From Octopus sinensis (Eukaryota): 64,000 nt of DNA. Both the position numbers and the translations under genes were made by a program. Of this stretch, positions 2,351-64,000 are shown in pieces (within the stretch, counting starts at the first letter, position 1; the number at the start of each line of letters is the position of its first letter). Under the pieces are notes generated by a model, which was not told where the DNA came from, ran no database searches, and saw only the letters and a list, made by a program, of their open reading frames with translations. The DNA is taken from contig NC_043012.1 in assembly GCF_006345805.1 (NCBI RefSeq), forward strand, positions 22,258,001 through 22,322,000, given 5' to 3'.

Positions 2351-2587
2351 TACCTATTTCTTTATTACCCACAAGGGGCCAAACATAGAGGGGACAAACA
2401 AGGACAGACATAGGTATTATGTCGATTGCATCGACCCCAGTGCGTAACTGGTACTTAATTTATCGACCCCGAAAGGACGAAAGGCAAAGTCGACCTCGGC
2501 GGAATTTGAACTCACAACGTAACGGCAGACGAAGTACCGCAAAGCATTTCGCCCGGTGTGCTAACGCTTCTGCTAGCTCGCCGCCTT
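2351..2587 (-). mobile_element. Young SINE family B with Tx1-type tail
   Basis: 11-bp TSD tgcacggtata (2340-2350 / 2588-2598). Confidence 0.9.
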
Positions 2588-9504: not shown

Positions 9505-9543
<39 letters not shown>

Positions 9544-10010: not shown

Positions 10011-10042
<32 letters not shown>

Positions 10043-10045: not shown

Positions 10046-10107
10046 CAAACCTTGTGTATGTGCGTTCGATTTTGCTTATATATATGTATGCATGTATATG
10101 TATATAT

Positions 10108-10318: not shown

Positions 10319-10349
<31 letters not shown>

Positions 10350-10473
10350 GGACAGGCTTCTTTCAGTTTCCGTCTACCAAATCCACTGTTGTAGAAGACA
10401 CTTGCATAATGTGCCACGCAGTGGGACTGAACCCAGGACCATGTGGTTGGTAAGCAAGCTGCTTAACACACAG
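10108..10473 (-). mobile_element. SINE family A copy
   Basis: Reverse complement of the 875-1299 element, with an internal deletion. Confidence 0.85.
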
Positions 10474-14072: not shown

Positions 14073-16286
14073 TATGCATATAAAAACACTGCTCACACTG
14101 AATGACGTCACCGGCGTTTCGGTTTGAGGTTTGCTTCTTCATTGAATAATCACCACTGGTTATTCTGAGATGATTTGGAATTTTCATTTCAGTATAGGAC
14201 TCGAGAAATAAAGCATTCGCTGATATGTGCAAAAGCTGGACAAGTTTAAGTTATATCAAACTACGCGCTTGAAACAGCGTTAGATTAAAATAACGATGTG
14301 TATATCATTTATAAATCTACGTACAAATATAGAATAGCACTTGATGTAATATTTTCTCCCAGAGAAACTTTTCTTAAGAGATTTGAGTGCTGAAAATACA
14401 ACTTGCTAAGAATTATGTCAGCGGATCGTCAGACACCGACGTTTTGGCTTGATTTAGCTTCTTCAGTCACTGAATCTTAGATGTATAGCACTTTGCCGCC
14501 AGCCCACAATGCATATGCAACACGGAACAACTGTAAAACATTAGACCACGCAAGAGAAAACTGAAAAACATTTGTAGACAACACCTCTATACTCTACTAA
14601 ATTCTCCACAAAATAAACAATTATTGATGGGATCTATACGTCCAATAGAGAAAAATATTACAGTTGGCTGAAGGATGTTATACACCAGTCACAAACGACA
14701 ATAAATATTAAATACTACAACCAAACATGTCTGCACCAATCACATTGGCTCGGCCAACTATAATAAAGCAACAGAATACACCAAAATTTTCCATCCTGGT
14801 GATAAGATCGAGACCTTTACTATTTCAAATATAAACTAGAGGGAACTCGTGCGAAAATAAGAGGAAACAAGGTTTTGATAAAACAGAGCATAAAACAAGA
14901 TATGGTAAAACCTATTTCTGTTTTTATACAACACACACACGCAAACATTTCTTTTCTCTTCTATGTGTGTGTGCATGTGTTCGTGTACGTGTGTTTGTGT
15001 GTGCATGCGTAATGCAAATATATAGATATAAACACACACGTATGGATGGTCGAGCGCATGCTTTTGAGGGTGGATTGCTATATGAAAAGTCGTATGCATA
15101 TGTGTGTATATACACATATATACGTACATACACACATGTATATATATGTATATATGTGTGTGCATGTGCGTATATGTATATATAAACGCACACTCACACA
15201 CAACCACTTATATACATATATATATATATATATATATGCATGCATATACACATTTACATATATGTATGTGTGTTTTTGATTATGTATGTACATACACATA
15301 TATTTACATATCCACACACGCACACACACACACACATGTATATATATATATATATTTCTATATAAGATCCGTGTTGAGTATGCTTATAGTCTCTCGAGGT
15401 TTATGACGTGTGCTGTACAGACGTTTCACCTTTTACCTTTTGAAGAAAGAGTCAGACAATTAGTAAATTAGCAAAATCTTAAGTTAATTTAGCCTGCAGT
15501 CTTGATGTTGCTTGTCCTTAACCTAATGGATTGCAAAGGAAGCAGTTAACCTAAGGTCTGCTGTCGGAATGTCCGCCTAATGGCGTTATTAAAACATTAA
15601 AAACTTTAATAGTCGTCTTTTGATGTTGAATTATTGTAATCATACAATTCATCTTTGCAGGTCATAATGTATACAAGAGCGCTTAGTAATTGGCACGAAA
15701 AGAAAGGGGAGGCAATTTTAGCCAGACTCAATAATTAACTATACGCCCGGCTTATCTCGGCTATCTCTATCGATATTTTATATAGATTTACATTTTTCGC
15801 TAGAGTCCAAGTTTAACCATAGACGGCGCTATGGAGTTATATAGTTAACATTTCTCTCTAATGACGTTTTAAAACTTAATAATATTCCATGACCATGTTG
15901 TTTCTGAATTTTATACATAGTTATTTCCGTGCTTCAAAAAGTTAATTTCATTTCCCTCGTTCGCAAAATTCTAATTTGAGGCATCAACCAAAATAATAAA
16001 GTTATGAACGTTTTTGTTTTTTTTTAATGTTTTTTTTTTAATTTTTTCTTTATCGTGTACGTGCGCGTGCGTGTGGGGGTGGGTGGGGGGAAGGTCATTA
16101 TGCATCGTCATAATTCGATTCGAGTACTTGGTGTCGGTTCAGATGACTTCACTCGTTGACTGGAAATAATAATAATAATAACAATAATAGTTTCAAATTT
16201 TGGCACAAGGCCAGCAATTTCAGAGGAAGGAGTGTTGTAAATTGATTACATCGATCCCTAGTGATCAACTGGTATTTATTTTACCA

Positions 16287-16522
16287 GGCGGCGAGCTGGC
16301 AGAAACGTTAGCACGCCGGGCGAAATGCTTAGCGGTATTTCGTCTGCCGTTACGTTGTGAGTTCAAATTCCGCCGAGGTCGACTTTGCCTTTCATCCTTT
16401 CGGGGTCGATAAATTAAGTACCAGTTACGCACTGGAGTCGATGTAATCGACTTAATACCTATGTCTGTCCTTGTTTGTCCCCTCTGTGTTTAGCCCCTCG
16501 TGGGTAATAAAGAAATAGGTAG
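16287..16522 (+). mobile_element. Young SINE family B nested in an older, opposite-strand family B copy
   Basis: 11-bp TSD ttattttacca (16276-16286 / 16523-16533). The flanks reconstitute a minus-strand family B copy. Confidence 0.88.
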
Positions 16523-26606: not shown

Positions 26607-27019
26607 ACTCTTTTACTCTTTTACTTGTTTCAGTCATTTGACTGCGGCCATGCTGGAGCACCGCCTTTAATCGAGCAACTCGACCCCGGGACTTATTCTT
26701 TTTTGTAAGCCCAGTACTTATTCTATTGGTCTCTCTTGCCGAACCGCTAAGTAACAAGAACATAAACACACCAGCATCGGTTGTCAAGCAATGCTAGGGG
26801 GACAAACACAGACACACAAACAAACACACATACATATATATATATATACATATACGACAGGCTTCTTTCACTTTCCGTCTACCAAATCCACTCACAAGGC
26901 ATTGGTCGGCCCGGGGCTATAGCAGAAGACACTTGCCCAAGATTCCACGCAGTGGGACTGAACCCGGAACCATGTGGTTGGTTAGCAAGCTACTTATCAC
27001 ACAGCCACTCCTGCGCCTA
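26607..27019 (-). mobile_element. Full-length SINE family A copy
   Basis: Complete head to tail, in reverse orientation. Confidence 0.9.
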
Positions 27020-27361
27020 TATATATATGAACTGACCTTCTCTGTAGCTTTTGTTATAGCCTTCAATGAAGCGGTATTAGGTGTTAATGTGTGCAGTGTA
27101 AGAGAGAAAATAAGAATCAGCATTATCGATTGAACGACTGATAGGAATTGGAAACGGTAAAACGGTTATGATAATTCTAACAGATTCTATCAAATATCCA
27201 TGTCACTTTCACTCAATTTTAACTGAATCGTCTAAAAATGGAGCAAAAAGGAAAAGAGAGAAAGCTTCCAAAAGACCGTTTATCTTGGTCTATATGCTGT
27301 AGTAATTATGTGTGTGTGTGTGTGTGTGTGTAGATAGATAAATAGATATACATGCATATAG

Positions 27362-29242: not shown

Positions 29243-29819
29243 CTGTTAAAATTACAAGAAGAGTTCCCAATGAGTTCAGTTTCTACACTGCACTATAAAC
29301 ATCAAAGAATTTTGGTAAGCTCTATGTCCCTCCAGTAAATATTATTAGCGATTAAGCATAAGACAGGCTCTCATTCCACTCTCACAATCCTTCACACAAC
29401 AGCCGATATGTAAAACCCGACGGTAAAAACGTACCCTGCTACGATCCTATTAATTTATTACCCAACACATTTCTTTTGAAATGTTTTATATGTATACATA
29501 TTGTCTGTGTCTGTTTAGAAATTATTTTCGTGTATAAAAGTGGTCGCGTTGCTTGTTTTTCTATCGAAATAATCTGTCGGAACGCATTATCATTTTATAA
29601 CATGAAAATTAATTGAAAAATTAATTTAGCGTTACGACCACGTAATATGGGAATGCCTGTACATACATGCATACACACGCACGCACACACGTACAACACA
29701 CGCACACATGCAAGCACAAACATACACCTTTCCCCTTTCTTTTGCCATCAGGTTGAGCAATCCCGAGTGATTTCCTTGACATGTAGGGAAATACCAAGTG
29801 TAGGTTTGTTGTTGCTGGC

Positions 29820-30041
29820 GAGCTGGCAGAAACGTTAGCACACCGGGCGAAATGCGTAGCCGTATTTCGTCTGCCGTTACGTTCTGAGTTCAAATTCCGC
29901 CGAGGTCGACTTTGCCTTTCATCCTTACGGGGTCGATTAAATAAGTACCAGTTACGGACTGGGGTCGATGTAATCGACTTAATCCGTTTATCTGTCCTTG
30001 TTTGTCCTCTCTGTGTTTAGCCCCTTGTGGGTAGTAAAGAA
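29820..30041 (+). mobile_element. Young SINE family B
   Basis: 20-bp perfect flanking direct repeat gtaggtttgttgttgctggc (29800-29819 / 30042-30061). Confidence 0.9.
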
Positions 30042-36721: not shown

Positions 36722-36870
36722 GCTTGTGAAGTTACCCGATCATGGTTTCACTATAGCTAAAAATATTTGCAAAGTCATCACGTTAACTTGTTTATCAGGG
36801 TAACGTTCGTCTCCGGAAGTCCAGCTGATTTTGTTTTGCTCACTATGATGGATCTTCGTCGGCTTCGACG
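36722..36870 (+). other. Candidate exon (5'UTR plus possible start, or non-coding)
   Basis: Strong acceptor tgctatttttcatttcAG and donor CG|GTGAGT. No full-length open frame; ends ATG ATG GAT CTT CGT CGG CTT CGA CG. Confidence 0.35.
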
Positions 36871-36885
36871 GTGAGTAATTTCAGT

Positions 36886-37270
36886 TACTCTTACTCTTTT
36901 ACTCTTTTACTTGTTTCAGTCATTTGACTGCGGCCATGCTGGAACACCGCCTTTAGTCGAGCTTATTCTTTGTAAGCCCAGTACTTATTTTATCGGTCTG
37001 TTTTGCCGAACCGCTAAGTGACCGGGACGTAAACACACCAGCATCGGTTGTCAAGCAATGCTAGGGGGACAAACACAGACACACACACATATATATATAC
37101 ATATATACGACAGGCTTCTTTCAGTTTCCGTCTACCAAATCCATTCACAAGGCATTGGTCGGCCCGGGTCTATAGCAGAAGATACTTGCCCAAGATGCCA
37201 CGCAGTGGGACTGAACCCGAAACCATGAGGTTGGTTAGCAAGCTACTTACCACACAGCCACTCCTGCGCC
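36886..37270 (-). mobile_element. Full-length SINE family A copy
   Basis: Complete head (ggcgcaggagtggctgtgtggtaagtagcttgctaaccaa on the minus strand) to tail. Confidence 0.9.
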
Positions 37271-37929
37271 CTTTCTTGTTTTTTTATCTTCCAAATTCAA
37301 ATTCTACTGAAGTCGACTTTGCTTTATATCCTTCCGGAGTCGATAAAATAAGTACCAGTGGCGCACTGGGGTCGATGTAATCGACAACCTTTCTCACCCA
37401 AAATTTCAAGCCTTGTACTTATAGAAGAAAGAATCATCATCATCATCATCATCATCATCAAGGCAAAGAGCTGGCAGAATCATTAGTTGAATTTCGCCTG
37501 TCTTTGCGTCTTCAGTTCAATGTAATCGACTTTCCCCTCCCCTCAAAAATTACAAATAATTGGAAAATAGCTATCATTATTATTAGGATGTCGACCAGAC
37601 AGAATTGTTAGAGCATCGGATAAAAGTTTTGCAGAATTTCATCCGACATTTTTCTGTAGTTACATAATTTATGCGATCAAGAGTTGTGGTGTCGTTTTGG
37701 TGTAGTGGTTAGAACAGTTGCACGATTTACAATAGGCGCAGTGTTCGAATCGCGCATGTATTTTTTCCGTCGGATGTGTTGTTAAGGAGGTTACTCCTTC
37801 AGCATAAGTTTTCTCATTCAGTCTCACTGCGTGATATTTTGAGCAAACGTCTCTATTACATTCCACATGCCGACTAAAGCCCTGGGATAAACGAAAACTG
37901 AAAGAAGCTCATCGTATATAAAGGTTAAA

Positions 37930-42828: not shown

Positions 42829-43430
42829 TGTATGTATGTATGTATGTATGTATATGCGTGTGTGTGCGTGTGTGTATACATGTGTAGGGACCATAGCTTT
42901 TTCTGTATGTACATATATTCGTCTATGCATTTTTGTGTATACGCCTGTATCTACACATACACACGTCCATGTCACTGGTGGGTCTATCTATCAGCATGTT
43001 GCATAGTTTCATATGATTAACTGTTCGTGCATCCATTGACGGTTTTGCTTTCGAATTTTGGCACCAGGCCAGCAAATTCGCGGGAGGCCATAAGTCGATT
43101 AAATCGAACCATCACCACCACCACCACCACCACCACCACCGCCTACAGTGCTCAAGGTGATACTTATTTTATCGACTCGGAAAAGATGAAAGGCGGAATT
43201 TGACCCTCAGATCATAAAAAAACGGACGAAATGCCGCTAAATATTTTGCTCGGCGCCGTAACGATTCTGCTTTTACACCTGTTGACAATATTGAAACATA
43301 AAAAAACATGGAACAGATTAAATGACCAAAAATCATTGCATGTTTGAAAAGCGAAACAGCAACAGGATTTCTTTTCTTTCTACTCTTCATCTTCACCTCC
43401 CTCTCTCTCTTCCCATCACATTCTATCTCC

Positions 43431-45270: not shown

Positions 45271-47570
45271 TCTTTTGCTCACTTTTGTAAATTGCTGGGT
45301 TGCTTATAAAGTTTTGCATATTCTTTCTTGGTTAGTTTCTCATTACTAAGAGCATTTCAGATGGCAAACTGGCAAAATCGTGAACGCGTCAGTTAAAAAT
45401 GCTTCATGGTATTTCGTCTGTCTCCACGTTCTAAGCTCAAATTCCGCCGAGGTTGACTTTCGGGGGTCGATAGAATAATAACCAATTGAACACTAGAGTC
45501 GATGTAATCGACTTAACCCCCTTCTCGAAACTTTCTGACCTTGTGACAAAATTTTAAGCCATCGTTCAAGGCGACGAGCGGGCAAAATCGTTAACACATT
45601 GGGTAAAAATGCTTAGAAGCATTTATCCGTCTTCACGTTCTGAGTTCAAATTCCGCCGAGGTCGACTTAACCTTTCGTCTTTCAAGGGTCGGCAAAATAG
45701 GCACCAGTTAAACGCTGGGGTCTATATCATCGAATAACCCAATTTCCCCCAAAATATCAGGCCTTGTGTCTTTAACAAAAAGGATTATTACGAGCCCTTC
45801 AGACTCACTATTAAGATTTCTTTCAAACCCATATCAACAAAAATAGCCTCCATATTTAAAGACGTTTTTTGTATCAGTTGATATGGTTTATCTTGCTTTT
45901 TTTTTTTTTGCTTGTTTCAGTCATTGGACTGCGACCATGCTGGGGCACTGGACTAAAGAATCTAAGTCGAACACAATGACCCCAGTACATATGTCTCTTA
46001 AGCCTGGTACTTATTTTATCAGTCTTTTTTAGCCGAACCGCTATGGTTACGGAGACGTAAACACGCTATCCCCGGTCGTCAAGCGGTGGTGGCGGACAAA
46101 CACACATATGTATATATGACATGCTTCTTTCAGTTTCCGCCTACCACATCCACTCACAAGACTTTGGTCAGCCCGAGGATATAACGGAAGACACTTGCCC
46201 AGTGTACCACACGGTGGGACTGAACCTGAAACCATGTGGTTGGGAAGCAAACTTCTCACCACACAGTCTCGCCTGCGCTTCGTATGTGTTGTCTTTCTTT
46301 TATTTTTTGTTTTAGTCATTTGACTGCGGCCATGCTGGGGCACCGCTTTAAAGAAGTTTAGTCGAACGAATCGATTCCAGTATTTATAATTTTTTTTAAC
46401 CTGGTACTTTGTCTATCGGCGTCATTTTACGAACCGCTAAAGGGACGTAAGCAAACCAACACCAGATGTAAGCGGAGTGGGGTGGAGGACAAACAGAAAG
46501 ACACACACACACACACACACATTTATATACTTACACATCCATATATATTTATTTGTAGGATTCATTCGAATCAAGATATTTGAAAATTAAGGACACCAAG
46601 TCATGCTCGAGATTAGCATATCCGTGTATCTACCCTATATAAACATACCCGTATGTGCCCATGCATACTCGGATATATCGATACACTTACACATACATGT
46701 ACCTGCACACACGAATATAAATATGCGTATAGATATACATGAAATTATATACCAATGCACGCCGGTATGCAGTTTCACGATCCACTGTATGTTCTAGATC
46801 CAACACAGAGAAGGTTGCAGGAATGGGGCTTATATAAAATAAGAACACAAAGAGGTTTAATGCTGTTTCAGACCCGCTTTTCTTTTTTTTTATAGCTAAG
46901 TAACTCAATTACATCATGAAAAGCCAGTCTCTCTTCGTTGTTACCGAAATGAAAGAGTCAATCTACTTTCCACATCTTAGTATTACGACGTTTCTAAACA
47001 ATTAGATCGAAGATAGAAAATCTAGGGAATGGATGTATATGCAAATTTCAAGTGTTATTGCTCTTTCATCAGTACGTCATGTAACCCGTCAATCCACTCA
47101 CAAGGCTTTGGTCGACCGGTGGTTATATTGTAGATGACGCTTGCCCAAAGTGTCACGCTGTGAGACTGAACCCAGGACCACCCGCTTGGCAAGCAATTTC
47201 TTTACCAAAATATATTATGCCTATATTCCCAGGGAGATTCCATGTGGTTATCCACGGGTAATATGATAAGACAGGAGCATTATAATAACTACCAGTCATA
47301 CTCTGCGATACTTAAATGAATCAGCTATAATTTCTCCCGTCCTCTTCCACTTCACAATGTGTTGGCTACGTGCCCAGCAGAAAAATACAAAAATCAATAA
47401 TAGTACATCATTTGATGTTTATCTTCATCGCTGTTAAAATAGTCGGTGTTGACTATCAAAACTTAATGATGGAGTATATGGATGTGTGTGTGTGTGTGTG
47501 TAGATATGTGTTTGTGTATGTGTATACTTTGTGTGTATGTCTGAGCTTGGATACATATATGGATACACAC

Positions 47571-50474: not shown

Positions 50475-50584
50475 CCTTTCTACTATAGACACAAGGCCTG
50501 AAATTTGTGGCAGGGGACAGTGATACATCGACACCAGTGTATCACAGGTACTGAATCTATCAACTCCGAAAGATGAAAGGCAAA

Positions 50585-51814: not shown

Positions 51815-52537
51815 GTTATGCACATCCTTCTTAATAAGAAATGCCCTCAATTCTGTCTCTCTGTCTGTCTCTCTCTCTCTCTCATTACAAGATACAAATT
51901 AGTTAATATTAGTATATGACCCATCATTTTCATTGAAATATATCTGTATAGATTCAAGAAAGAATTACGTATAAGAAGGTAAAGCAATATCGATTTAAAA
52001 TATCAAAAGGCATCTTAGTTTCTAACATTTTCATTACCATACAGGAAGTTTTGTCTGTGAGATCCTCTGGATCTTTTCGGTTTGAACGGCAGTTTTTTAA
52101 AATAATTTCCACGTAACTAAACACTTTTAAACTTCGTATACTGGTAGAATGTGTTTATAAAACATCTTTTTCTTTTGGCTATATAGAGAAAATTCTATAG
52201 TTTGTAAGATATTTGTTGTTTTTTTTCTTCAATTTCTGCAATTTTAACCAATCAATGCCGTCTATTGAGGTAAAAACATTCTGTGCCGTATGAATATGTC
52301 CCTCGTTTAAGAAACAGATTGGGTTTATATAAACAAACAAACAAGACATACATTCGTACATACATACATACATACAACATACATACATACATACATACAT
52401 ACATACATACATACCCTGTTGCTGATGTTGAAATTCCAATGAAGGAACCTTAGATCTAGGTTAGAAACCGGCTCTTTCTTGAAATAAAACTGAACAATGA
52501 CATACATACGTGTGTACGTACCTACGTGCGGTCGTAT

Positions 52538-52762
52538 GAGCTGGCAGAAACGTTAGCAACGCCGGGCGAAATGCTTAGCGGTATTTCGTCTGCGTTACGT
52601 TGTGAGTTCAAATTCCGCCGAGGTCGACTTTGCCTTTCATCCTTTCGGGGTCGATAAATTAAGTACCAGTTACGCACTGGGGTCGATGTAATCGACTTAA
52701 TACCTATGTCTGTCCATGTTTGTCCCATCTGTGTTTAGCCTCTTGTGGGTAATAAAGAAATA
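52538..52762 (+). mobile_element. SINE family B with Tx1-type tail
   Basis: Near-identical to the 16287 and 60307 copies. Confidence 0.85.
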
Positions 52763-54629: not shown

Positions 54630-55850
54630 AGGGTGCGATAGGTAAATTATCGCCATCTTATATTTTTAATTTTGCTCATGCGCATTGTTTTTGATTTTGT
54701 TGACTACACAGTATAGTAGGATCAGTTGGGCACTGTCTATGAGAAAAACAACACCAAGATGCAATTCACTCTGTCAGATATTTGGAAATGACATGCAATT
54801 CTGCTTGGCATTCGCGCTGGAAGCTCCAATACGGACATTTCAGAGTGTTTGGGTGTCAATCGGAAGACATGGATCGAGAGTGATAAAAATCAAACATCCA
54901 GTCAACATCATGGTGTTTGGAGTGATCACCAGTGATGGCGACGTTATGCCTCCATTCATCTTCCCACGTGGCCTTAGGTCCAACACGGTGGCCTACATCA
55001 AGTGCCCGGAGGAGGTAGTGCTGCCTTGGGTCAAGAGGGTGGCTGCTATGTCTGGCAACAGGACTCTGCACTATGCCACACAAACAGAACCTAGTCATGG
55101 CTGTCAGACAATTTCTGCGACCACATCAACCCTAACATCTGGCCACCTAACTCCCCAGACTGCAAGCCCCTTGATTAATATGTGTGGGGCGCAGTTGAGC
55201 GAGATACCAACAAAACTCCTACTCTTTTACTTGTTTCAGTCATTTGACTGTGGCCACGCTGGAGCAACGCCTTTAGTCGAGCAAATCGACCCAGGACTTA
55301 TTCTTTGTAAGCCTAGTACTTATTCTATCGGTCTCTTTTACCGAACCGCTAAGTTACAGGGACGTAAACACACCAGCATCGGTTGTCAAGCGATGTTGGG
55401 GGGACAAACACAGACAAACATACACACACACATACATATATACATATATACGACGGGCTTCTTTCAGTTTCCGTCGACCAAATCCACTCACAAGGCTTTG
55501 GTCGGCCCGAGGCTATAGTAGAAGACACACTTGCCCAAGGTGCCACGCAGTGGGACTGAACCCGGAACCATGTGGTACGTAAGCAAGCTACTTACCGAAG
55601 ATGAAGTGAAGGCTAGGATTATGGCAGCATTCACCAACTTAAAAAAGGAGACCGCCCAGAAGAGTTGCAGAAGACTCCGATGTTGTCTGGCGGTCGTGGT
55701 TGAAGCCAATGGCGATTTTATTGAATAATTTTACTCTTTAGTATTTCAAGACATTTTCATGTAATTTTGGTAAATATATAAGTTAAAATGAGACGACATA
55801 GTTATTTTCCTTTACACGTTATTTAGACGAGAGCTTATTCACTACACCAT
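54630..55850 (+). pseudogene. Internally deleted Tc1/mariner (maT/DD37D-like) transposase remnant
   Basis: Decayed segments: HTH-like WK*HAILLGIRAGSSNTDISECLGVNRKT; KHPVNIMVFGVITSDGDVMPPFIF; YVWQQDSALCHT...WPPNSPDCKPLD*YVWG; and after the SINE EDEVKARIMAAF...VVEANGDFIE*. Confidence 0.85.
55218..55595 (-). mobile_element. SINE family A copy inserted in a DD37D-like transposase
   Basis: Family A sequence splits the transposase between ...ERDTNKT and TEDEVKARIM... Confidence 0.85.
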
Positions 55851-56051: not shown

Positions 56052-56254
56052 AACAAACAACTAGTTTCCACACAATTCCTGTCTACCAAATTCACTCACA
56101 AGGCATTGGTCGGCCCAGTACTATAGCAGAAGACAATTTGCATATGAGGCCACGCATTGTGTGTGAACCCGAACCGGAAACCAGCTGGTTGCAGAGCGAA
56201 CTTCATAACCACATAGCCATGACTGTTTGATTCTGATACAACACACAGCTTTAA

Positions 56255-57383
56255 GGAGTCCAACGCGGTAAACTGGAGAGGATATGGGGTAGAACTGTGT
56301 TTGATGGCCACAAAAGAGGACATTGAAAGGTTCCCCTACAGAATAGAAATTGAAGATGAGAAAACCCTCAGTGTAATTGTAGAGGGAAGAAAGCCAAACT
56401 GCTACTTGTGCGGGACAAGGGGTCACATTAAAAAAGAGTGCCCGTTATACGAATTCGTAGCGGAGTGCGAGCAGGAACTTGAAGAAAAGAAGAATACGGT
56501 AAATGAAAAAGAAAACATAGAAAAGGAAACAAAACAACAAGAGAAAGGAAATAATAAGTCAATGAAGGAAAAAGAAATAAAAGAAAAGAAGAAATAGAAC
56601 CAAAACAGAGGCAGGAAAAAAAAAGGAAAAAGAAACAACAGGAAAAAAACAAGAGAGAGATCAGAATCAAACGAAAAGAAAAGACGGCACACAAAAAGAA
56701 AAAGAAAAGGAACATAAAACACGAGAGAAAGAGAGAACAGACAAAGAACCAAAAAGACAAGAGAAGGAAGAAGAAAGAAAAGAAGGCAAAAGAGAGAAAG
56801 AGAGAAACAAAGAGAGGAGAACAAGGAAGAAATAAGCCCGAAAAGAAAAACGAGGGAAAACGTAGGACGGAAACAAGATTACTACTTCTACAAGTTAGTA
56901 ACCTTCAATTTCTGCCTGAAATGAAAGAATTGACATGTAATACGGAGGACATATATGGGTCAACAGGATGACCGATCAGTGGCAGGAGACTGCTCTAATC
57001 CCCGAAGAAAGAGTCGCTGAGTTCCTCAGAGCTGCCGGAGAGAGTGTAACGTTTTACACGAGTGTTCGAGTGGAGAGAGCGGCTGCCTGAGGGCTCAGTG
57101 ACTGACTTTAGAGAATTGAAAACTATTATGGAATACGTATAGAATTGTGAGAAGAGAGAGAAGAAAGAAGAGAAAAAAGAAAATATTGTGAAATATATGT
57201 GACGAAAATGTAACCTCTCGATTCCGGGGATCGAGTGGGCATTTACATCTCATTGTAAATATTCTTTCATATGTCATTTTTTACTTTTATTTTTTTCCTT
57301 TTCTTGTCATTCGCTTTCTTATTTTAAGTTCCCCGATTGTATTGTCCCCTCTATGTTCGCCCCTTGTGGGTAATAATAAAATC
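56255..57383 (+). mobile_element. 5'-truncated ORF1-only (HAL1-like) retroposon
   Basis: Perfect 14-bp TSD acacacagctttaa (56241-56254 / 57384-57397). It starts mid-ORF1, then has a K/E-rich A/G tract and a 3'UTR ending in ttgtcccctctatgttcgccccttgtgggtaataataaa. No ORF2. Confidence 0.85.
56256..56597 (+). pseudogene. ORF1 fragment with zinc knuckle
   Basis: Open frame from the 5' junction: ESNAVNWRGYGVELCLMATKEDIERFP...VIVEGRKPNCYLCGTRGHIKKECP. Confidence 0.85.
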
Positions 57384-57819
57384 ACACACAGCTTTAACAG
57401 ATGAGTGCGAGGCAATGAGCATCAGAAGAGGTTAAAGCAAGACAAAGAAAGGATCTGCACTAGATTAGGAACGAGAGGCGATGAGAAGGATCTAGAAGCT
57501 ATCTTTACTACGGTACGAAGCGAGGCCAATCCATTTGAAGTTGGGGGCCACTGACCCTTTTACATCTGTCTTTCGGTGTTGTTTGCTTCTGATAAGGTGA
57601 AGCGAGACTTGTTGGAAGCGGAAGAAGTTTAGTGTCAGCAGCTTTACATATATTTGCAAAGAAAGAGTGAAGAGAGAGAAAGTGATTGATGCGTTCTTCG
57701 ACCCAATCAAGCATCAGAAACTTGTAACGTTGGTGTGTGCGTGTGTCTGCATGTATCTGAGTGTGTGTGTATCTGTGTGTGTCTATGTTACACACACACA
57801 CACACACACATATGTGTAT

Positions 57820-57866
<47 letters not shown>

Positions 57867-57869
<3 letters not shown>

Positions 57870-57898
57870 AGTGGCTGTGTGGTAAGTAGCTCGCTAAC
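57867..57898 (+). mobile_element. Isolated tRNA-like head of SINE family A, broken by retroposon insertion
   Basis: aggagtggctgtgtggtaagtagctcgctaac matches the head of intact family A copies (e.g. reverse complement of 37231-37270). The remainder of the SINE does not follow. Confidence 0.8.
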
Positions 57899-59383
57899 GC
57901 GCATGTGTCGAGTTATTTGCTGTGTTGAGTTTTTGACTAGGCGGACAGAATCTTTTGAGCTGCTCGCCAGCGGTTTGTTGGCAAGTGGAAAAGAATGTAT
58001 TCAGACCTTAGCGAGTACGAACTATCCACATCAGAGGAGGAGCTCGTTAAGGCGGTAAACAGAATGGACGAACATTTGGAAAGAACAAAAAGTTTTGCTG
58101 ACGCGGCAGAGGTAAAGAAAAAGGAAGTAGACCTAACAGAACTGAAGGAGCTGTATAAGATGACACAGAAGGTGGGAAGTGACGTAAAGTTATTACCCCC
58201 GAAAACGGTTATGGCAAATATGGAAAAGAAGACAATTACCTACAAGGTGCACTCAGTGGAGAGTAGGAGGGTGGAGCAGATGAAGATGGAAAAAGTAGAA
58301 AAAGCTCTCAAGGGGCTTTCGAAGGAAGTAACATATATAGCAAAAGGAAGCGGATATGGGACGGTTGTTGTCCAGTTTAAAACAGAAGAGGAGGCAAAGA
58401 GGCTGGCAAGTACAACCGTAAAAACTGAGGAACTAGTACTTCTACCCTCCTATCTTAGAAGAAAGAATTCTAAGGTGAGGGTAGAAGGAATTCCACCTGA
58501 CATAAAAAGTGGCTTGGGTTGCGGCAGCCGTCCTCGTTGGAAGTGAGGAGGTGACTGTCCTCCAAGCCACAGAGACAGAGGAAGGAAGCTACAAAGGAAA
58601 ATTACTGGAAATGATCATACAAGCGGAGGCGAAGGAGCTGGAAAATTTGGCGGAAACGGTGACAATGGGAGAAATAGTATTGAGAGTATGGGTAGAAGGC
58701 AGAACCCCGCGGTGCTTTAAATGTGGCCAAAAAGGCCACATTAGAGCACACTGTCCCCTACAGAAGAAAAAGATAGAGGAAAAAATACATGAACCAGTTG
58801 CGGAGACAAAGAAGAAAAAAGAGGACGAAGACAAAGACGGACGAAAGGAGGAAGAATGGATAGTAGCAGAGAGCAGAAGTAAGAAGAGGAAGAAAAGAAA
58901 GAACACTGAGTGTGAAATGGTACCCCAGTCCAACACCATCCCACCTAAGACCACTCAGACCCACCCGCCCCATACAGACACCAGACCCACCAACTCCCTT
59001 TCCCCACAAGAAAAAAAGAAAAAGAAAAAGAGCAGACACCACAGAATTTAGAAAACCCCTCCCCCGGTGAAAAAGGTTGCGAAAGAATGTTGTCTTTAAG
59101 CGATAGTGAGAGTGGAAAAAGAAGGACTAGACCAGAGATTAGAGAAGAATTCAGACTCAAAGGCAGCGAGTGGTGTTGCTCAGAGTGGGGTGAGTAGCAC
59201 ACTCGTCATATTTCATTTTCAGATATCATGCATGTTATCATAAACTTAATTTATTTTCTCACGTTCATTTTCATGTCACTCACAGTATCATTTTATTTTT
59301 ACATATTCTTAATTGTTATATGTCTCCACATGTTTTGTAGTGTCCCCTCTATGTAATGCCTTTATGGCAAAATAATTGAAATA
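57899..59383 (+). mobile_element. Full-length ORF1-only (HAL1-like) non-autonomous retroposon
   Basis: Flanked by a 15-bp imperfect TSD (aagtagctcgctaac 57884-57898 / aagtagcttgataac 59384-59398). It has a short 5'UTR, ORF1, about 330 bp of 3'UTR with no EN/RT, and an A-rich tail. Confidence 0.85.
57995..59051 (+). pseudogene. Tx1-type ORF1 with one frameshift near 58505
   Basis: ORFs 57995-58546 and 58509-59051 join into one protein. It aligns without gaps to the LINE ORF1 (37/94 identical by hand count) and contains VWVEGRTPRCFKCGQKGHIRAHCP. Confidence 0.85.
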
Positions 59384-59761
59384 AAGTAGCTTGATAACCT
59401 CACTGACTGAAGAGTGACTTTGCTTACCTTACTACGGTTTGGACGCGTTTTCTTCCCGGTAAGAGTTTTGCTGTGTTGTTAATTGTTGAATTTTACTACT
59501 GAACGTTGTTGAACTGTCTTGTTCTCCGGTTTTACCGGGGAATAATTGGATAATTTGTTACTGTTGAACTGTTAGCCATTGTGGCTTTTTTATCTACGTG
59601 ACTATATATAGTCTTGCCAGACTATTTTCGTGCCCCTTCCCCCGAATGGGGGTGGGAATTGAAATTTTTTGAACTGCTTTTTACCACTTATTGAACTGCT
59701 TTGGAAGAAAAACTTTCTATAGGTTTCCCAGTTTTGTGGGAAACCAATATTCGTAATTTTT

Positions 59762-61447
59762 GTGTTGTCTAATTTCAACAGAATAACGTCTGTTGAGATT
59801 ATTCACGAAAATAGTGCTCTTGAGGAGAGCAATGTTAACTGTAGTAAAAAATTTTCTGCGGTAGCCGCAGTGGCTACCGAGAACATTGACATCAATGTCA
59901 ATCAGCTCGTCGAGCTATTTAAAAGAATGAAAGAGGAGGGTGGTGATGTTAAAATATCACCCTCCGCCAGTATCGTGGAGACCGAGAAGCGGACCGTAGT
60001 GTTTAAAACCTTCTGTCCACAAAGCAGAAGGTTCAAACACTTTGAAAAAAACACCATCGAGAAATGCCTGTCCCCGATTTGGAAGGACATTGTGTACGTC
60101 GCCAGGGGACGGGCATATGGCACTGTGGATGTCCGCTTCTCGGGGGAAGAGGTGGCCCGCGGGCATTCTGTGAACCCCCTAAAAACCAAGGAGGTGGTAC
60201 TTTTCCCAAGCTATAGGGGACGCAGGACGTCCTGGGTCAGGATTGCAGAAGCCCCGCCGGAAGTAGATCCGGTAGAGGTAGTGGCCGCCCTGTTATATAA
60301 AAGGACGGCGAGCTGGCAGAAACGTTAGCGCGCCGGGCGAAATGCTCAGCGGTATTTCGTCTGTCGCTACGTTCTGAGTTCAAATTCCGCCGAGGTTGAC
60401 TTTGCCTTTCATCCTTTCGGGGTCGATAAATAAAGTACCAGTTTCGCACTGGGGTCGATATAATCGACTTAATCCCTTTGTCCGTCCTCTCCATGTTTAG
60501 CCCCTTGTGGGTAGTAAAGAAATATATATAAAAGGACGGACAAAATTAAAATACTACAAGTAACATGCTCTGCCCCTCTATATTGGCTTGGGCGAGACAT
60601 TAATATAATAATTCAAGGAACACCGGAGGACCTGCAGCTCCTTCCTGAGAGGGTGCTCGTGGGCGAGAACGTGGCCCTCAGGGTACAGGTCGAAGGCCGA
60701 AAACCCACCTGTTACGCCTGCGGCAAAAAGGGCCACATTCGTGTAGACTGTCCAGACAAGCAAAAGAAACCGCAGACACCAGGCCCCTCAGATAATTAAA
60801 AAATCCCTACCCTTGCAAACTCACCTACCCCTACAAAAACAAAAAATCCCACTCCTGCTGTTACGGTGCCAACCCCAAAACAAACTGAAGAAAAAACCCA
60901 GCCCTCGCACTCACATACCCCTACACTATTAAAACCTCCCACCTCCTTAAAAACTGCGGCGCCTACTGAACAAACTATTGCTACCCCAGACGATACCATG
61001 GAGGTATCAGAGGGGGGATTTACAACAGTTCGTAAAAGAATTCGTGCATCATTCCCATCCACATCCCCTACAAAAAATAATAAAAACAAAGACACACCAC
61101 AGACACGAAAAAAAAAATCCCGCTCAGCTGGCCCAGAAAAAGAAGACAAAAAAAATGAACTCATATTAATTGAATTCGACACACAAAACAAATACATAAA
61201 CGATATTGTGGTTCCGCATCAGTCAGCAAGACTGTACAACAAATACAAAGATCGAAACGAGAGATGTGCGTGGATTGCGGAAACAACGTTCAAACAATTA
61301 AAAGACAGACAACCAAACGCCATCCGGCATATGGCGAACTTGCCGGACTATCTGAAGAAGGAGGAGAAAGAAGGGGTCCACAAATGTGTGGTGAGGTCGG
61401 CCCCAACCTTTCCAATGAAATGTAAGAAGAACTTTTACTTTTTGTAA
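59762..61447 (+). pseudogene. Tx1 ORF1 (gag-like, RRM-like region + CX2CX4HX4C knuckle), interrupted by a SINE and one in-frame TAA
   Basis: Removing the SINE and one TSD copy restores the frame: ...VAALLYKRT|DKIKILQVTC...VQVEGRKPTCYACGKKGHIRVDCP. After one in-frame TAA the same frame continues through the P/T/K-rich ORF 60866-61447. Confidence 0.9.
60307..60524 (+). mobile_element. Young SINE family B inserted into Tx1 ORF1
   Basis: Near-consensus ggcgagctggcag...gccccttgtgggtagtaaagaaata. TSD tatataaaaggac(gg) at 60294-60308 and 60525-60539. Confidence 0.92.
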
Positions 61448-64000
61448 TGGCTTCTCTTAACCTTGGTTGTTTAAATGTGCGTGGTCTGAGTTCGAAGTGG
61501 AAGCAGGCTTGTTTCCTCGACGACCTCAGATCACATGATATACATGTGATGGTTGCTACAGAGACCAAGCTGGACAGCCTACAAACCTTCTCGCCTCTCC
61601 TGAATGGCTACGAGAAAATCATGTCTCCTGGCCAGACCGGAGGGCGAGGGGGTGTAGTGGTACTGATCCGTAAAGACTTGGCTCTGCAGACATGTACAGT
61701 CTATGTAGACCCAGAAGGTGGGCTGGTCGTCCTTGATGTGACATACAGCAGTAAGGCCTTCAGGTTGATCGGACTCTATGCACCTTGTGCTAGAGGTTTC
61801 CAAACTGATTTTTATCGGCGCCTAGAGGGCTTTCTCGTGACGTCGAAGACTTTAGTGATATTAGGGGACTTTAATGCTATCGTTGACGTACACATCGATA
61901 GCGTTGGCTCGATCTATAGGAAAGTGAACTCACGTCTCGTGGATCTGCTTAAGCGGTTTCAGCTGGCAGATCGTTACAGACTTGACCATCCGAACGTCCC
62001 AGAGTGGACCTGGATGAGTGGCGACGGAAGGTTCAAGTCTTATCTAGACAGGATAGTGATAAGAACTAGAGATAAGTCTAGTTTTAGTTTTAGCTCGTCC
62101 AGGTGCCCTATACTGACCATAGAATGGTCACGTGTAGACTGGACATAGATAGCACACTTAAGATAGGAACCGGCTACTGGAAGCTGAACAAGTCTATTTT
62201 GACTCGCGAGGCATACCGTAGCCGGATTAAGGAGTTAGTGCAGAGGGCGTTAACCGGAGCCGTGGTTAATAACCGGTGGTGGTTCGCCCTCAAAAGAGCC
62301 ATTCGATTCGAGTCCATTAGATTTAGTAAACAACTAAGACTAGATAGGGCTAGAATTGAAGGGCAACTAGTTAAGAACTTAGAGGAGGCGTTGAGGTTGG
62401 GCTCTGCATCTCACATTTTAGCGGCGAGAACGGCATTAGACCGTCACCTCAAAACCAAACATGAGGGATGTAGAGTTCGGGCTAAAGTACGAGCATTGGG
62501 CCGTGAGGGAATTAATGTTGCCGGATGGGCCCGTACGATAGAAACACAGCGTGGCAACGATGCCACAATTGGGTCTCTTGTTGATGAAAACGGATGCACG
62601 ATCAAGAAGCGGGACGAGATGTGTGAGGCACTTCACAAGCACTTCGCCGAGTTGTTCGGGAGGTGCGGGACGCTGGATCATGTTGAAGCCCTTAGGGACT
62701 TCCTGTCTGGTGGCCCGCGCCTCTCGACACAAGAGGCTGAGTGCTGTGAAGGGCCAATCACAGCCGAAGAAGTAATCGAGGTGTTGGGCAAGTGCCGCGG
62801 GGAGAAGTCGCCGGGTCTCGATGGTCTGCCCTATGAATTTTATAAAAGTATGCCAGACTTGTTCGGGCACCTGCTGGCTAGCGTCTACGCCAACTGGCAG
62901 CAGAATGGGAGAATTCCCAAGTCTGCGAGCCGGGGGGCGGTGACGTTGATCAGGAAGGACCCGAACAAGGGGGACGAAACTTCAGGCCCATAACTCTGTT
63001 GAACACAGAGTTAAAGATTCTGGCCAAGGTGCTAGCAAAAAGGTTGGCGCGGGTCGTGGACAAACGTGTCGGGGAAGCGCAAACGTGCGCTATCCCTGGC
63101 AGAACGATCTACGACAATCTCCACCTTATACGCTACTCCTTAGAGAGGGTGGGGAAGCTTTCTGGCGCAGGGGGAGCACTGGTACATTTAGACCAGTCCA
63201 AAGCATTTGATAGGGTCGACCATCAGTACTTGGCGGCGGTCCTCGGTGAGGCTGGCCTAGGCCCGACCTTTCGAGGTTGGATCGCTGCTTTGTATAGCGA
63301 CATCGAGTCTGTAGTCAAGGTGAACGGTTTCTTTTCGAAGCCGTTCAGGATCAAGCGTTCAGTTCGTCAAGGGTGTCCCTTGTCCTCGCTCCTATACGTA
63401 TTGGCTCTTGAGCCTTTGCTGCGGAAGTTGGAGGCACTAGGGGGCGCCCCGCATGATCTATGGTGTGGAAGAGGAGCTACGGCGTATGCGGATGACACCT
63501 CCATCATCGTGGCAGACGAAGGCCAGCTTCCAGTGGTGGAAGAGGTCATCAAAAGCTACGAGGCGGTCGCAGGATCAAAGGTTAACAAGGACAAGTCGGT
63601 CGGTTTGCAACTCGGCACCTGGAGGGGCAAGCCGATGCCGTCCAATAACGTCGTAGGGCGTTGGACGGAAGGTCCTGTTAAGCTGCTCGGAGTCTAGTTC
63701 GGGCCAGACCTCCAGATTGAGAAAAATTGGAGTGAGGTGGCCAACAAAGTGACCGCTCTAACCCAGACCTGGTCTGGGCGGGCGTTATCCCTGCTAGGAA
63801 AGGCGGAGGTGGTGCAGATGTTTATAGCATCAGTAATCACCTACCGTCTGACCGTGGTGCCTTGCCCCGATTTGTGGCTGAACAAGTTGGAGAGAATCCT
63901 TTTCCGATTTTTGTGGAAAGGAGGAAAGCCACTTGTAAAGCGCTCTGTCTGCTGCCAGAAACCGCTAAAGGGTGGGCTAGGGATGCCTTGGCTGAGGATG
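61447..64000 (+). pseudogene. Tx1 ORF2: APE endonuclease + reverse transcriptase (two frameshifts, one TAG)
   Basis: APE motifs NVRG, ETK, YAP, GDFN, SYLDRI, TDH. RT motifs KSPGLDGLPYEFY, LDQSKAFDRVDH, VRQGCPLS, AYADD, VNKDKS. Frameshifts near 62100 and 62990; TAG at 63695 followed in frame by FGPDLQIEKNW...GGLGMP. Confidence 0.95.

What the first reader, a model, noticed from the sequence alone, without database searches (positions are those of the whole stretch)
57342..59385. SINE family B, and both half-LINEs share one 3' tail with a compensated stem-loop
Seen: the tail of element 1 (ttgtcccctctatgttcgccccttgtgggtaataa, 57342-57376) matches the family B SINE tail (reverse complement of 2351-2400) at 34/36 aligned positions. 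Element 2 keeps tgtcccctctatgt (59341-59354) followed by TGCC-tttat-GGCA, whereas element 1 and the SINE have GCCC-cttgt-GGGT: a different stem with the same 4-bp stem / 5-nt YUURU-loop geometry. Established: SINEs of 'stringent' LINEs carry the partner's 3' stem-loop for RT recognition, while mammalian L1 needs only poly(A). Inference: a three-tier parasitic system (autonomous Tx1, ORF1-only elements, tRNA-SINE) using a stringent Tx1 RT-recognition hairpin.
Basis: partly seen in the sequence, partly recalled or inferred. Interest (0 to 1): 0.78.

Follow-up and report, generated by a model that had tools for sequence, protein, structure and literature searches.

The report
Octopus LINE, half-LINEs, SINEs share tail
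In this octopus-like window, a short non-coding repeat (SINE) and two LINE derivatives that keep only the first gene end in the same ~50-base tail with a tiny hairpin that related full-length LINEs also carry, a well-supported new example of the known way such parasites borrow a LINE's copying enzyme.

Summary
Element 1's tail (57342-57376) matches the SINE B tail at 34/36 positions. Element 2 keeps the 14-mer TGTCCCCTCTATGT, followed by a different 4-bp stem with a 5-nt loop.

- Full-length LINE relatives carry a homologous tail at their extreme 3' end. They have APE, RT and zf-RVT domains and are 43-68% identical in RT to the window's LINE. One is from the cuttlefish Acanthosepion pharaonis.
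- The tail maps to the same LINE group as the window's LINE.
- It is not an inserted SINE fragment. 14- and 13-bp target-site duplications enclose ORF1 plus tail, and 3'UTR similarity runs beyond the part shared with the SINE.

Across 26 tails the hairpin is 92% paired, against 62% in shuffles. Three of its four pairs show compensatory changes, and the loop is YUYRU. A third ORF1-only element, in Octopus sinensis, has the same architecture, so this tier replicates.

The window also holds a second SINE tail type, GGC-CTTGT-GCC-(ATT)n.

Caveats:
- "Tx1" is shown only as L1/Tx1 superfamily.
- The SINE's tRNA head is not detected.
- The window LINE's own 3' end lies outside the window.
- RT recognition is inferred.

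This is a new member of a known kind.

The parts
56255..57383 (+). Element 1: an ORF1-only LINE derivative, 5'-truncated inside ORF1. It is flanked by the 14-bp target-site duplication ACACACAGCTTTAA (56241-56254 and 57384-57397).
   Evidence: read directly. The CCHC knuckle ORF at 56301-56597 hits Pfam zf-CCHC. It is 38% identical to el2 ORF1 over 52 aa, E 3e-11. tblastn finds no ORF2.
57337..57383 (+). Tail of element 1: 14-mer at 57343-57356; hairpin GCCC-CTTGT-GGGT at 57359-57371; terminal AATAATAAAATC at 57372-57383. There is no poly(A).
   Evidence: (34/36 to the SINE B tail).
57899..59385 (+). Element 2: a full-length ORF1-only element of 1487 bp. Its 5'UTR is about 96 nt, ORF1 runs 57995-59051 with one frameshift near 58510, and the 3'UTR is 334 nt. 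It is inserted in the head of a different SINE (family A). The duplication is GTAGCT[C/T]G[C/A]TAAC at 57886-57898 and 59386-59398.
   Evidence: ORF1 is 36% identical to the adjacent LINE's ORF1 over 259 aa, E 1e-52. Pfam gives zf-CCHC and a weak RRM_3 hit. No ORF2 is found.
59329..59385 (+). Tail of element 2: 14-mer at 59341-59354; hairpin TGCC-TTTAT-GGCA at 59357-59369; terminal AAATAATTGAAATAAA.
   Evidence: The UUUAU loop recurs in the O. sinensis half-LINE (L091).
59400..64000 (+). Autonomous-type LINE that runs off the window end. The 5'UTR starts at about 59400. ORF1 runs from about 59762 to 61447 and is interrupted by a SINE B. ORF2 starts at 61447 (APE), with RT from about 62999. ORF2 has two frameshifts and one stop. 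Its 3' end is not in the window.
   Evidence: (Exo_endo_phos E 3.6e-13; RVT_1 E 1.3e-22).
2355..2585 (-). The tail hairpin is GCCC-CTTGT-GGGT, with the loop at 2375-2371. The duplication is TATACCGTGCA.
16287..16517 (+). SINE B copy with loop CTCGT and the duplication (GGTA)TTATTTTACCA.
29817..30041 (+). SINE B copy with a 20-bp duplication, GTAGGTTTGTTGTTGCTGGC.
52530..52762 (+). SINE B copy. Its stem is GCCT/GGGT, a single-sided change to a U-G pair. No clear duplication was found.
60307..60524 (+). SINE B copy inserted into the LINE's ORF1. The duplication is TATATAAAAGGACGG.
16202..16212 (-). Hairpin core of a second SINE tail type ('family C'): GGC-CTTGT-GCC followed by AAAATTTGAAAC and (ATT)n. 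Other copies lie at 19071-19081 (+), 19124-19134 (+), 43060-43070 (-), 45760-45770 (+) and 50488-50498 (-).
   Evidence: (6 matches against 0.49 expected). The SINE body is the same as in family B. The hairpin version is the same as in the cuttlefish-type LINE tails.

Best explanation
The roughly 50-60-nt tail is the 3' end of a cephalopod LINE lineage of the L1/Tx1 superfamily. It consists of a C-rich motif (UGUCCCCUCUAUGU in octopus), a 3-5-bp G+C-rich stem closed by a YUYRU pentaloop, and then AAUAAAGAAAU(A/C). There is no poly(A).

Three kinds of element in this genome end in it:
- full-length LINEs with ORF1 and an APE-RT-zinc-finger ORF2;
- about 1.5-kb ORF1-only derivatives (elements 1 and 2), which have lost ORF2 but keep their own 5'UTR, ORF1 and 3'UTR;
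- about 230-bp SINEs (family B, and family C with another stem version).

The most likely mechanism is the "stringent" one described for other LINE/SINE pairs. The LINE's ORF2 protein recognises the hairpin tail on an RNA, nicks the target, and starts reverse transcription at the very end of the tail. Any RNA carrying the tail can therefore be copied in trans.

Shown here: the shared tail, the hairpin covariation, the duplications, the absence of poly(A), ORF1 homology, loss of ORF2, and the presence of the tail on autonomous relatives.

Inferred: that the hairpin is the reverse-transcriptase handle, and which LINE subfamily serves which parasite.
For: **Shared tail.**

**Autonomous relatives carry it.**
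- L001: ORF2 C-terminus with zf-RVT, 68% RT identity to the window's LINE. It ends ...ATGTTTCCG-GGCC-CTTGT-GGCC-AATAAAAGAAATC-(ATT)n. Its local alignment to the SINE B tail scores 41, against a null of 13 +/- 2.4 (0/2000).
- L003 (two copies), L004 (Acanthosepion pharaonis) and L089 (two copies) have GGC-CTTGT-GCC. L085 (two copies) has AAGGC-CTCGT-GCCTT. In each, the hairpin lies at the extreme 3' end, after a C-rich motif and before AATAAA.

**Hairpin covariation.**
- 15 tails: 91.7% of cells paired against 60.4% in shuffles (0/500). Three of four pairs change on both sides.
- 26 tails: 92.3% against 61.9% (0/500). Slid controls give 26-50%.
- RNAalifold predicts the same hairpin unaided.

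**Retrotransposed as units.** Element 1 has a 14-bp duplication and element 2 a 13-bp one. The SINE B copies have 11-20-bp duplications. None has poly(A).

**The ORF1-only tier is a family.** L091 in Octopus sinensis is 55% identical in ORF1 to el2. It has the same 5'UTR-ORF1-334-nt 3'UTR-tail layout, its own 12-bp duplication, no ORF2, and a UUUAU loop like el2.

**LINE superfamily.** ORF2 has Exo_endo_phos, RVT_1 and zf-RVT. The best solved-structure relative is human L1 ORF2p at 1.5e-21, against R2 at 2e-12. An RRM/CCHC ORF1 in non-mammalian animals is described as consistent with Tx1 (PMC5203782). L1-Tx1 is the only L1-like class listed as active in O. vulgaris (PMC13282606).
Against: - The 3' end of the window's own LINE is beyond base 64000. 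No autonomous LINE from an Octopus genome with the exact SINE B stem (GCCC/GGGU) was recovered. The closest autonomous tail, L001, comes from a metagenome contig of unknown host.
- The hairpin is tiny, at about -3 kcal/mol. Single-sequence folds are not better than shuffles, and for SINE B and element 1 the minimum-energy fold does not use it.
- The tails for the covariation count were partly found by looking for the hairpin, and they represent only about 8 independent lineages. The numbers therefore overstate independence.
- AAUAAA next to the hairpin allows a role in 3'-end processing.
- No functional data exist.
Confidence: 0.75

Rival explanations
1. The conserved tail serves the transcript's own 3'-end biology, not recognition by the reverse transcriptase. 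Candidate roles are a polyadenylation or cleavage signal with an upstream element, RNA stability, or export. On this view the SINEs and half-LINEs simply inherited it.
For: AAUAAA follows the hairpin directly in L001, SINE B and element 1, or within 17-47 nt in L003, L004, L085 and L089. The hairpin is thermodynamically weak.
Against: Family C SINE tails keep the hairpin but have no AAUAAA. Inserted copies end a few bases after AAUAAA with no poly(A), so reverse transcription starts inside the tail rather than on a poly(A). Compensatory stem changes with a fixed loop are the signature reported for stringent LINE tails (PMC3472496, PMC4176376).
Confidence: 0.12
2. The ORF1-only elements are not a replicating tier. 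They are dead, internally deleted LINE copies that happen to lie here.
For: Only two copies are in the window. Element 1 is 5'-truncated, element 2 has a frameshift, and the two differ strongly from each other.
Against: Element 2 and the O. sinensis element L091 have diverged to 55% ORF1 identity. They still share the same ORF2-less layout, homologous 5' and 3' UTR stretches and the UUUAU loop, and each has its own duplication. The deletion therefore predates many rounds of copying. Element 2's ORF1 is only 36% identical to the neighbouring LINE's.
Confidence: 0.08
3. The tails on the half-LINEs are SINE B fragments. They were either inserted later at the elements' ends or joined by template switching during reverse transcription.
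For: Element 1's tail is 94% identical to the SINE B tail. SINE B does insert into LINEs; one copy sits in ORF1 at 60307-60524.
Against: The duplications flank the whole element, not the tail. No SINE body sequence precedes the tail. Elements 1 and 2 and the L001 3'UTR share TTGTA(T/G)(C/T)GTCC, and element 2 and L001 share ATTCTTAATTGTTA (read). Neither motif is present in SINE B. Autonomous relatives carry the tail natively, twice per locus and at the same distance from ORF2.
Confidence: 0.03
4. The similarity is due to chance or low complexity.
For: The regions are short and partly A/T-rich.
Against: The 14-mer search gave 6 matches against 0.28 expected. BLAST E values are 3e-10 and 1e-8. 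Shuffle tests gave 0/2000.
Confidence: 0.01

Closest known systems
Stringent LINE/SINE pairs with a shared 3' stem-loop, for example eel UnaL2/UnaSINE1 and zebrafish ZfL2-1/ZfL2-2 (L2 clade). Sources: Kajikawa and Okada 2002, as cited in PMC4824008; Hayashi et al. 2014, PMC4176376.
   Same: The SINE and LINE share the last tens of bases. A small hairpin has a conserved loop and a variable, compensated stem. There is no poly(A), and short repeats can follow the tail, as (ATT)n does here.
   Different: The LINE clade differs: here it is the L1/Tx1 superfamily, not L2. The sequence and loop differ (YUYRU pentaloop). Function is untested here.
L1-clade LINEs with stringent-type tails: maize/sorghum LINE1-1_ZM with its SINEs, and Chlamydomonas L1-1_CR/SINEX-3_CR (Ohshima 2012, PMC3472496).
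   Same: These are L1-superfamily LINEs whose conserved 3' hairpin, with compensatory changes, is shared with SINEs. [quoted passage not shown]
   Different: Those cases are in plants and a green alga and end in poly(A). This case is in an animal, a cephalopod, and has no poly(A). It also adds an ORF1-only tier.
HAL1 ('half-L1') elements of mammals. This comparison rests on my own knowledge (Smit 1999; Bao and Jurka 2010) and was not checked in the library.
   Same: They are non-autonomous LINE derivatives that keep ORF1, lack ORF2, and spread as families.
   Different: HAL1 belongs to relaxed, poly(A)-dependent mammalian L1. The elements here carry a specific hairpin tail and a CCHC-type ORF1.
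Tx1 group of the L1 clade: Xenopus Tx1L, and Keno, Kibi, Koshi, Mutsu and Dewa (Kojima and Fujiwara 2004, as cited in PMC3747384 and PMC5203782).
   Same: ORF2 has APE, RT and a zinc finger. ORF1 has RRM-like and CCHC parts. RepeatMasker-type surveys list L1-Tx1 as an active class in octopus (PMC13282606).
   Different: Tx1-group elements are known for target-specific insertion, whereas the seven insertions read here lie in unrelated sequences. No phylogeny with reference Tx1 elements could be made.

Membership tests
Stringent-type LINE/SINE partnership (shared 3' tail) | The SINE 3' end is homologous to the 3' end of a LINE. | tested here: met
   The SINE B tail matches the L001 LINE tail with score 41 against a null of 13 +/- 2.4 (0/2000). 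It matches half-LINE element 1 at 34/36. The autonomous partner in the same genome was not seen, because the LINE's 3' end lies outside the window.
Stringent-type LINE/SINE partnership (shared 3' tail) | A conserved stem-loop in the tail, with compensatory stem changes and a conserved loop. | tested here: met
   92% of cells are paired against 62% in shuffles. Three of four pairs change on both sides. Loops are CUUGU, CUCGU or UUUAU.
Stringent-type LINE/SINE partnership (shared 3' tail) | Copies end at the specific tail or at short repeats, not at poly(A). | tested here: met
   Duplications abut ...AAAATC...GAAATAAA and ...GAAATA. (ATT)n follows in L001 and in family C.
Stringent-type LINE/SINE partnership (shared 3' tail) | The tail is required for retrotransposition by the partner's ORF2 protein. 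| not testable with these tools
   This needs a retrotransposition assay.
L1 clade, Tx1 group | ORF2 with an N-terminal APE endonuclease, an RT, and a C-terminal Cys/His zinc-binding domain. | tested here: met
   The window LINE has Exo_endo_phos and RVT_1. Relatives P0001 and P0281 add zf-RVT. The best PDB relative is human L1 ORF2p.
L1 clade, Tx1 group | A type I ORF1 protein with an RRM and a CCHC knuckle. | tested here: inconclusive
   zf-CCHC passes its cut-off. RRM_3 scores 16.9 bits, below its cut-off of 22.9. The AlphaFold model shows two beta-alpha-beta-beta-alpha-beta-like units, but its pLDDT is 47.5.
L1 clade, Tx1 group | The RT groups with reference Tx1 elements in a phylogeny. 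| not tested
   No reference Tx1 or L1 sequences could be fetched, and cluster members carried no names.
L1 clade, Tx1 group | Target-sequence-specific insertion. | tested here: not met
   The seven duplications differ: ACACACAGCTTTAA, GTAGCTCGCTAAC, GTTAGCACGCCG, (GG)TATACCGTGCA, (GGTA)TTATTTTACCA, GTAGGTTTG... and TATATAAAAGG.... The only shared trait is a start with GTA, GTT or GGTA in 5 of 7.
ORF1-only non-autonomous LINE derivative (HAL1-like) | It encodes a homologue of LINE ORF1 and has no ORF2. | tested here: met
   Element 2 against the LINE's ORF1 gives E 1e-52. There is no tblastn match to ORF2 outside 61456-64000. L091 has none either.
ORF1-only non-autonomous LINE derivative (HAL1-like) | It spreads as a family: diverged copies share the deleted architecture, and each has its own duplication. 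| tested here: met
   This holds for element 2, element 1 and L091. Only three copies were seen.
tRNA-derived SINE | The head is recognisable as a tRNA. | tested here: not met
   ARAGORN finds no tRNA in the window. Rfam gives no tRNA match on a SINE B copy at E <= 1. Box A-like (TAGCAGAAGCG) and box B-like (GAGTTCAAATTCC) motifs are visible by eye only.
tRNA-derived SINE | It is short, non-coding and dispersed, with duplications and a LINE-type tail. | tested here: met
   There are five copies of about 230 bp, four of them with duplications.

The most novel reading that the evidence does not exclude
One small pentaloop hairpin (stem plus YUYRU) has been kept at the 3' end of an L1/Tx1-like LINE lineage since before octopuses and cuttlefish split. 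It is the handle by which several octopus SINE families (B and C here) and at least two ORF1-only lineages are copied.

This would name a partner LINE for part of the large, mostly "unclassified" octopus SINE load. It would also give an animal example of stringent template recognition inside the L1 superfamily, supporting the idea that L1's poly(A)-only mode is derived.
Probability: 0.4. Interest if true: 0.6.

Novelty: new member of a known kind. Interest (0 to 1): 0.5.

Why it matters
SINEs make up about 12% of octopus genomes, and most families are unclassified with no assigned partner LINE (PMC13282606). The LINE so far highlighted in octopus is an RTE element (PMC9115989).

A shared, compensated hairpin tail ties at least two SINE families and an ORF1-only family to L1/Tx1-like LINEs. 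That gives a concrete, testable partner assignment.

SINEs with L1-clade tails were reported as very rare and were known from plants and an alga (PMC3472496). An animal case would bear on whether strict tail recognition is ancestral in the L1 superfamily.

The principle itself, that SINEs copy the LINE's 3' tail, has been textbook knowledge since the 1990s.

Tried and rejected
- An exact look-up of the window's APE ORF, meant to extend the window past 64000, found nothing on record.
- A metagenome scan with the ORF2 alignment returned only distant LINEs at 22-45% identity from unrelated samples. None was useful.
- A protein search with the window LINE's ORF1 found no hits.
- Contigs L002, L088, L090 and L092 stop before a 3' tail or show none.
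- L086 and L087, a lineage at 38% RT identity, have an A/T-rich 3'UTR with no convincing hairpin.
- Cluster names, hoped to give a clade label, were all absent.
- Rfam gave no family on the window at gathering thresholds and no tRNA on SINE B.
- Single-sequence RNA folds had z-scores from -1.6 to +0.8, so the hairpin cannot be argued from energy alone.
- The AlphaFold model of element 2's ORF1 had pLDDT 47.5, too poor for a fold search.
- A long-range pairing between the UUGU-rich upstream stretch and AAUAAA, seen in some minimum-energy folds, was considered. It was not pursued because it is not conserved in element 2 or in family C.
Full report
**What is in the window.** The window is rich in SINEs and has about 40% G+C. 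Its ORF1 proteins have their closest named relatives in Octopus sinensis and O. bimaculoides, so it is almost certainly an octopus genome.

Three related elements lie head to tail between 56.2 kb and the window end.

- **Element 1 (56255-57383).** It is flanked by a perfect 14-bp duplication, ACACACAGCTTTAA, at 56241-56254 and 57384-57397. It starts inside an ORF1 that still has its CCHC knuckle (Pfam zf-CCHC). It has no ORF2.
- **Element 2 (57899-59385).** This is a complete 1487-bp unit: about 96 nt of 5'UTR, an ORF1 at 57995-59051 with one frameshift near 58510, and a 334-nt 3'UTR. It sits in the head of an unrelated SINE (family A). Its 13-bp duplication, GTAGCT[C/T]G[C/A]TAAC, lies at 57886-57898 and 59386-59398.
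- **A LINE from about 59400.** It has its own ORF1 (interrupted by a SINE B at 60307-60524) and an ORF2 with APE and RT domains. ORF2 has two frameshifts and one stop, and the element runs off the window at 64000.

tblastn with related ORF2 proteins finds ORF2 only at 61456-64000. Elements 1 and 2 therefore truly lack it.

Element 2's ORF1 is 36% identical to the LINE's ORF1 over 259 residues (E 1e-52). Element 1's remnant is 38% identical to element 2 over the knuckle region (E 3e-11).

- The 14-mer TGTCCCCTCTATGT is exact at 57343-57356, 59341-59354 and 2383-2396 (minus strand). Near-exact copies lie in three more SINE B copies. In total there were 6 matches against 0.28 expected.
- BLAST gives 94.4% over 36 columns between the SINE B tail and 57342-57376.
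- Element 1 has GCCC-CTTGT-GGGT. Element 2 has TGCC-TTTAT-GGCA.
- The window holds five SINE B copies: 2355-2585 (minus strand), 16287-16517, 29817-30041, about 52530-52762, and 60307-60524. Four of them have duplications of 11-20 bp.
- None of the elements ends in poly(A). The duplications abut ...GAAATA, ...AAAATC or ...GAAATAAA.

**Do autonomous LINEs carry the tail?** The window LINE's own 3' end is out of reach. An exact look-up of one of its ORFs found nothing, so I went to relatives of its RT.

- **L001.** This is the closest relative, P0001, at 68% identity, on a 2.1-kb metagenome contig. It encodes the ORF2 C-terminus with the zf-RVT domain. After a 270-nt 3'UTR it ends ...CTGTCCTTGCCTTTTGTATCGTCCTTAATGTTTCCG-GGCC-CTTGT-GGCC-AATAAAAGAAATC, followed by (ATT)n. 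It aligns to the SINE B tail over about 58 nt, with score 41 against a null of 13.0 +/- 2.4 (0/2000 shuffles). The stem is compensated relative to SINE B: GGCC/GGCC against GCCC/GGGU.
- **More distant full-length relatives** are 43-52% identical in RT.
  - L003 has two copies.
  - L004 is from the cuttlefish Acanthosepion pharaonis.
  - L089 has two copies. These three loci end with a C-rich motif, GGC-CTTGT-GCC, and then AATAAA 17-47 nt later.
  - L085, with two copies, has AAGGC-CTCGT-GCCTT.
  - Where a locus holds two LINE copies, both have the hairpin at the same distance from ORF2, so it is an integral part of the 3'UTR.

**Not inserted SINE fragments.** Several points argue against this.
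- The duplications enclose ORF1 plus tail as one unit.
- No SINE body precedes the tails.
- Elements 1 and 2 and the L001 3'UTR share TTGTA(T/G)(C/T)GTCC just upstream of the part shared with the SINE.
- Element 2 and L001 share ATTCTTAATTGTTA, read.

**The hairpin.**
- On 15 loop-centred tails the 4-bp stem is paired in 91.7% of cells, against 60.4% in column shuffles (0/500). Three of four pairs change on both sides, and slid controls give 23-47%.
- Adding the family C and O. sinensis tails gives 26 sequences. These are 92.3% paired against 61.9% (0/500), with slid controls at 26-50%.
- Pair types found:
  - the loop-closing pair is C-G in 25 of 26;
  - the next pair is C-G or G-C;
  - the third pair is C-G or G-C;
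  - the fourth pair is G-U, A-U, U-A or G-C.
- RNAalifold finds the same hairpin unaided.
- Loops are CUUGU (most), CUCGU (the L085 lineage and one SINE B copy) and UUUAU (element 2 and the O. sinensis half-LINE). The consensus is therefore YUYRU, not YUURU.

Three caveats apply. The hairpin is worth only about -3 kcal/mol, and single-sequence folds are not better than shuffles. I located some of the tails by looking for the hairpin. The sequences also represent only about eight independent lineages.

**The ORF1-only tier.** A protein search with element 2's ORF1 found O. sinensis LOC118767527 at 55% identity and an O. bimaculoides CCHC protein.

The O. sinensis locus, L091, holds a 1.6-kb element at 9458-11063. 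It has a perfect 12-bp duplication (GTTAGCACGCCG), a 5'UTR and ORF1, and about 330 nt of 3'UTR with stretches homologous to element 2's. There is no ORF2. The tail is ...TGTCCCCAATGTG...CCC-TTTAT-GGA-TAAATAAAGAAATC.

Two copies that have diverged to 55% protein identity still share the deleted architecture and the UUUAU loop. ORF2 was therefore lost before much of this lineage's spread. It is a replicating, HAL1-like family rather than a chance deletion.

**A wider pattern.** Other SINE copies in the window have the same body as family B but a different tail: GGC-CTTGT-GCC-AAAATTTGAAAC-(ATT)n. They lie at 16202 (minus strand), 19071, 19124, 43060 (minus strand), 45760 and 50488 (minus strand), giving 6 matches against 0.49 expected. 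The same tail occurs in O. sinensis.

This is the stem version of the cuttlefish-type LINE tails. L001 combines the AAUAAAAGAAAUC of family B with the (ATT)n of family C. At least two SINE families and two half-LINE lineages therefore use versions of one hairpin.

**Mechanism.** The best-supported reading is the stringent LINE/SINE model (PMC4824008, PMC4176376, PMC3472496). The LINE's ORF2 protein recognises the hairpin tail, and reverse transcription starts at the tail's end. Any RNA with the tail is then copied in trans.
- The half-LINEs supply their own ORF1 protein but need ORF2 from a full-length element.
- The SINEs need both proteins.

All structural facts above are shown. The recognition step is inferred. 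The main rival is that the tail serves 3'-end processing, since AAUAAA is adjacent. That reading fits poorly with family C tails, which lack AAUAAA, and with the absence of poly(A).

**Which clade?**
- ORF2 has Exo_endo_phos, RVT_1 and zf-RVT.
- Its best solved relative is human L1 ORF2p at 1.5e-21, against 2e-12 for R2.
- ORF1 has a CCHC knuckle and a sub-threshold RRM.
- Ivancevic et al. describe RRM/zf-CCHC ORF1s in non-mammalian animals as consistent with Tx1 (PMC5203782).
- L1-Tx1 is the only L1-like class listed as active in O. vulgaris (PMC13282606).

I could not obtain reference Tx1 sequences or names. "Tx1" therefore remains a reasonable label, not a tested placement. The target specificity typical of Tx1 is not seen here: the seven target sites differ, although five begin with GTA, GTT or GGTA.

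The SINE's tRNA origin is not confirmed by ARAGORN or Rfam. Only box A-like and box B-like motifs are visible.

**Novelty.** Shared SINE/LINE tails with compensated hairpins are long known. Within the L1 clade they were reported as rare: three SINEs, in maize, sorghum and Chlamydomonas (PMC3472496).

None of the papers I read assigns a partner LINE to octopus SINEs or mentions ORF1-only elements in cephalopods. Repbase entries, which I could not consult, may already note it.

I rate this a new member of a known kind. It is well supported and of moderate interest.

Noticed in passing
window 16202-16212(-), 19071-19081, 19124-19134, 43060-43070(-), 45760-45770, 50488-50498(-): A second SINE tail type ('family C') sits on the same SINE body as family B. 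It reads GGC-CTTGT-GCC, then AAAATTTGAAAC or ..GAAAGG, then (ATT)n. This is the stem version found on the cuttlefish-type LINE tails.
   Followed up: partly
window 19071-19134: Two family C hairpin tails lie 53 nt apart behind one SINE body. The tail is either duplicated or there are nested or tandem insertions.
   Followed up: no
window 60307-60524: A SINE B copy is inserted inside ORF1 of the LINE, with the 15-bp duplication TATATAAAAGGACGG. The parasite has disrupted a copy of its presumed helper's family.
   Followed up: yes
window 57868-57898 and 59386-59410: Element 2 and the 5' end of the LINE lie within about 10 bp of each other in the head of one family A SINE. This could be coincidence or re-use of one target site. 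The LINE's 3' junction, which would decide between them, is outside the window.
   Followed up: partly
window 56241, 57886, 2350, 16518, 30042, 60525; L091 9446: Five of seven target-site duplications begin with GTA, GTT or GGTA. SINE B copies read GAAATAGGTA at the junction. This suggests microhomology between the RNA's 3' end and the nicked target, or a weak nick-site preference.
   Followed up: partly
window 36860-37290(-), 26800-27035(-), 860-1080: Family A SINE (head GGAGTGGCTGTGTGGTAAGTAGCTTGC...) ends in (GTAAAAGA)-like repeats and has no such hairpin. It presumably uses a different partner LINE.
   Followed up: no
window 60001-64000: The LINE is markedly richer in G+C (0.48-0.53) than the rest of the window, where most 2-kb windows are 0.33-0.44.
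   Followed up: no
L004 8590-8612; L089 9198-9225: In the cuttlefish-type LINE tails a second small hairpin lies between the first hairpin and AAUAAA. It reads UUGUAC...GUGCAA in L004 and UUGUAC...GUACAA in L089, with one U-A to U-G change between the two lineages.
   Followed up: no
window 54685-55730: A 277-aa ORF and the sequence after it look by eye like a decayed DNA-transposase remnant. Pfam finds nothing at E <= 0.01.
   Followed up: partly
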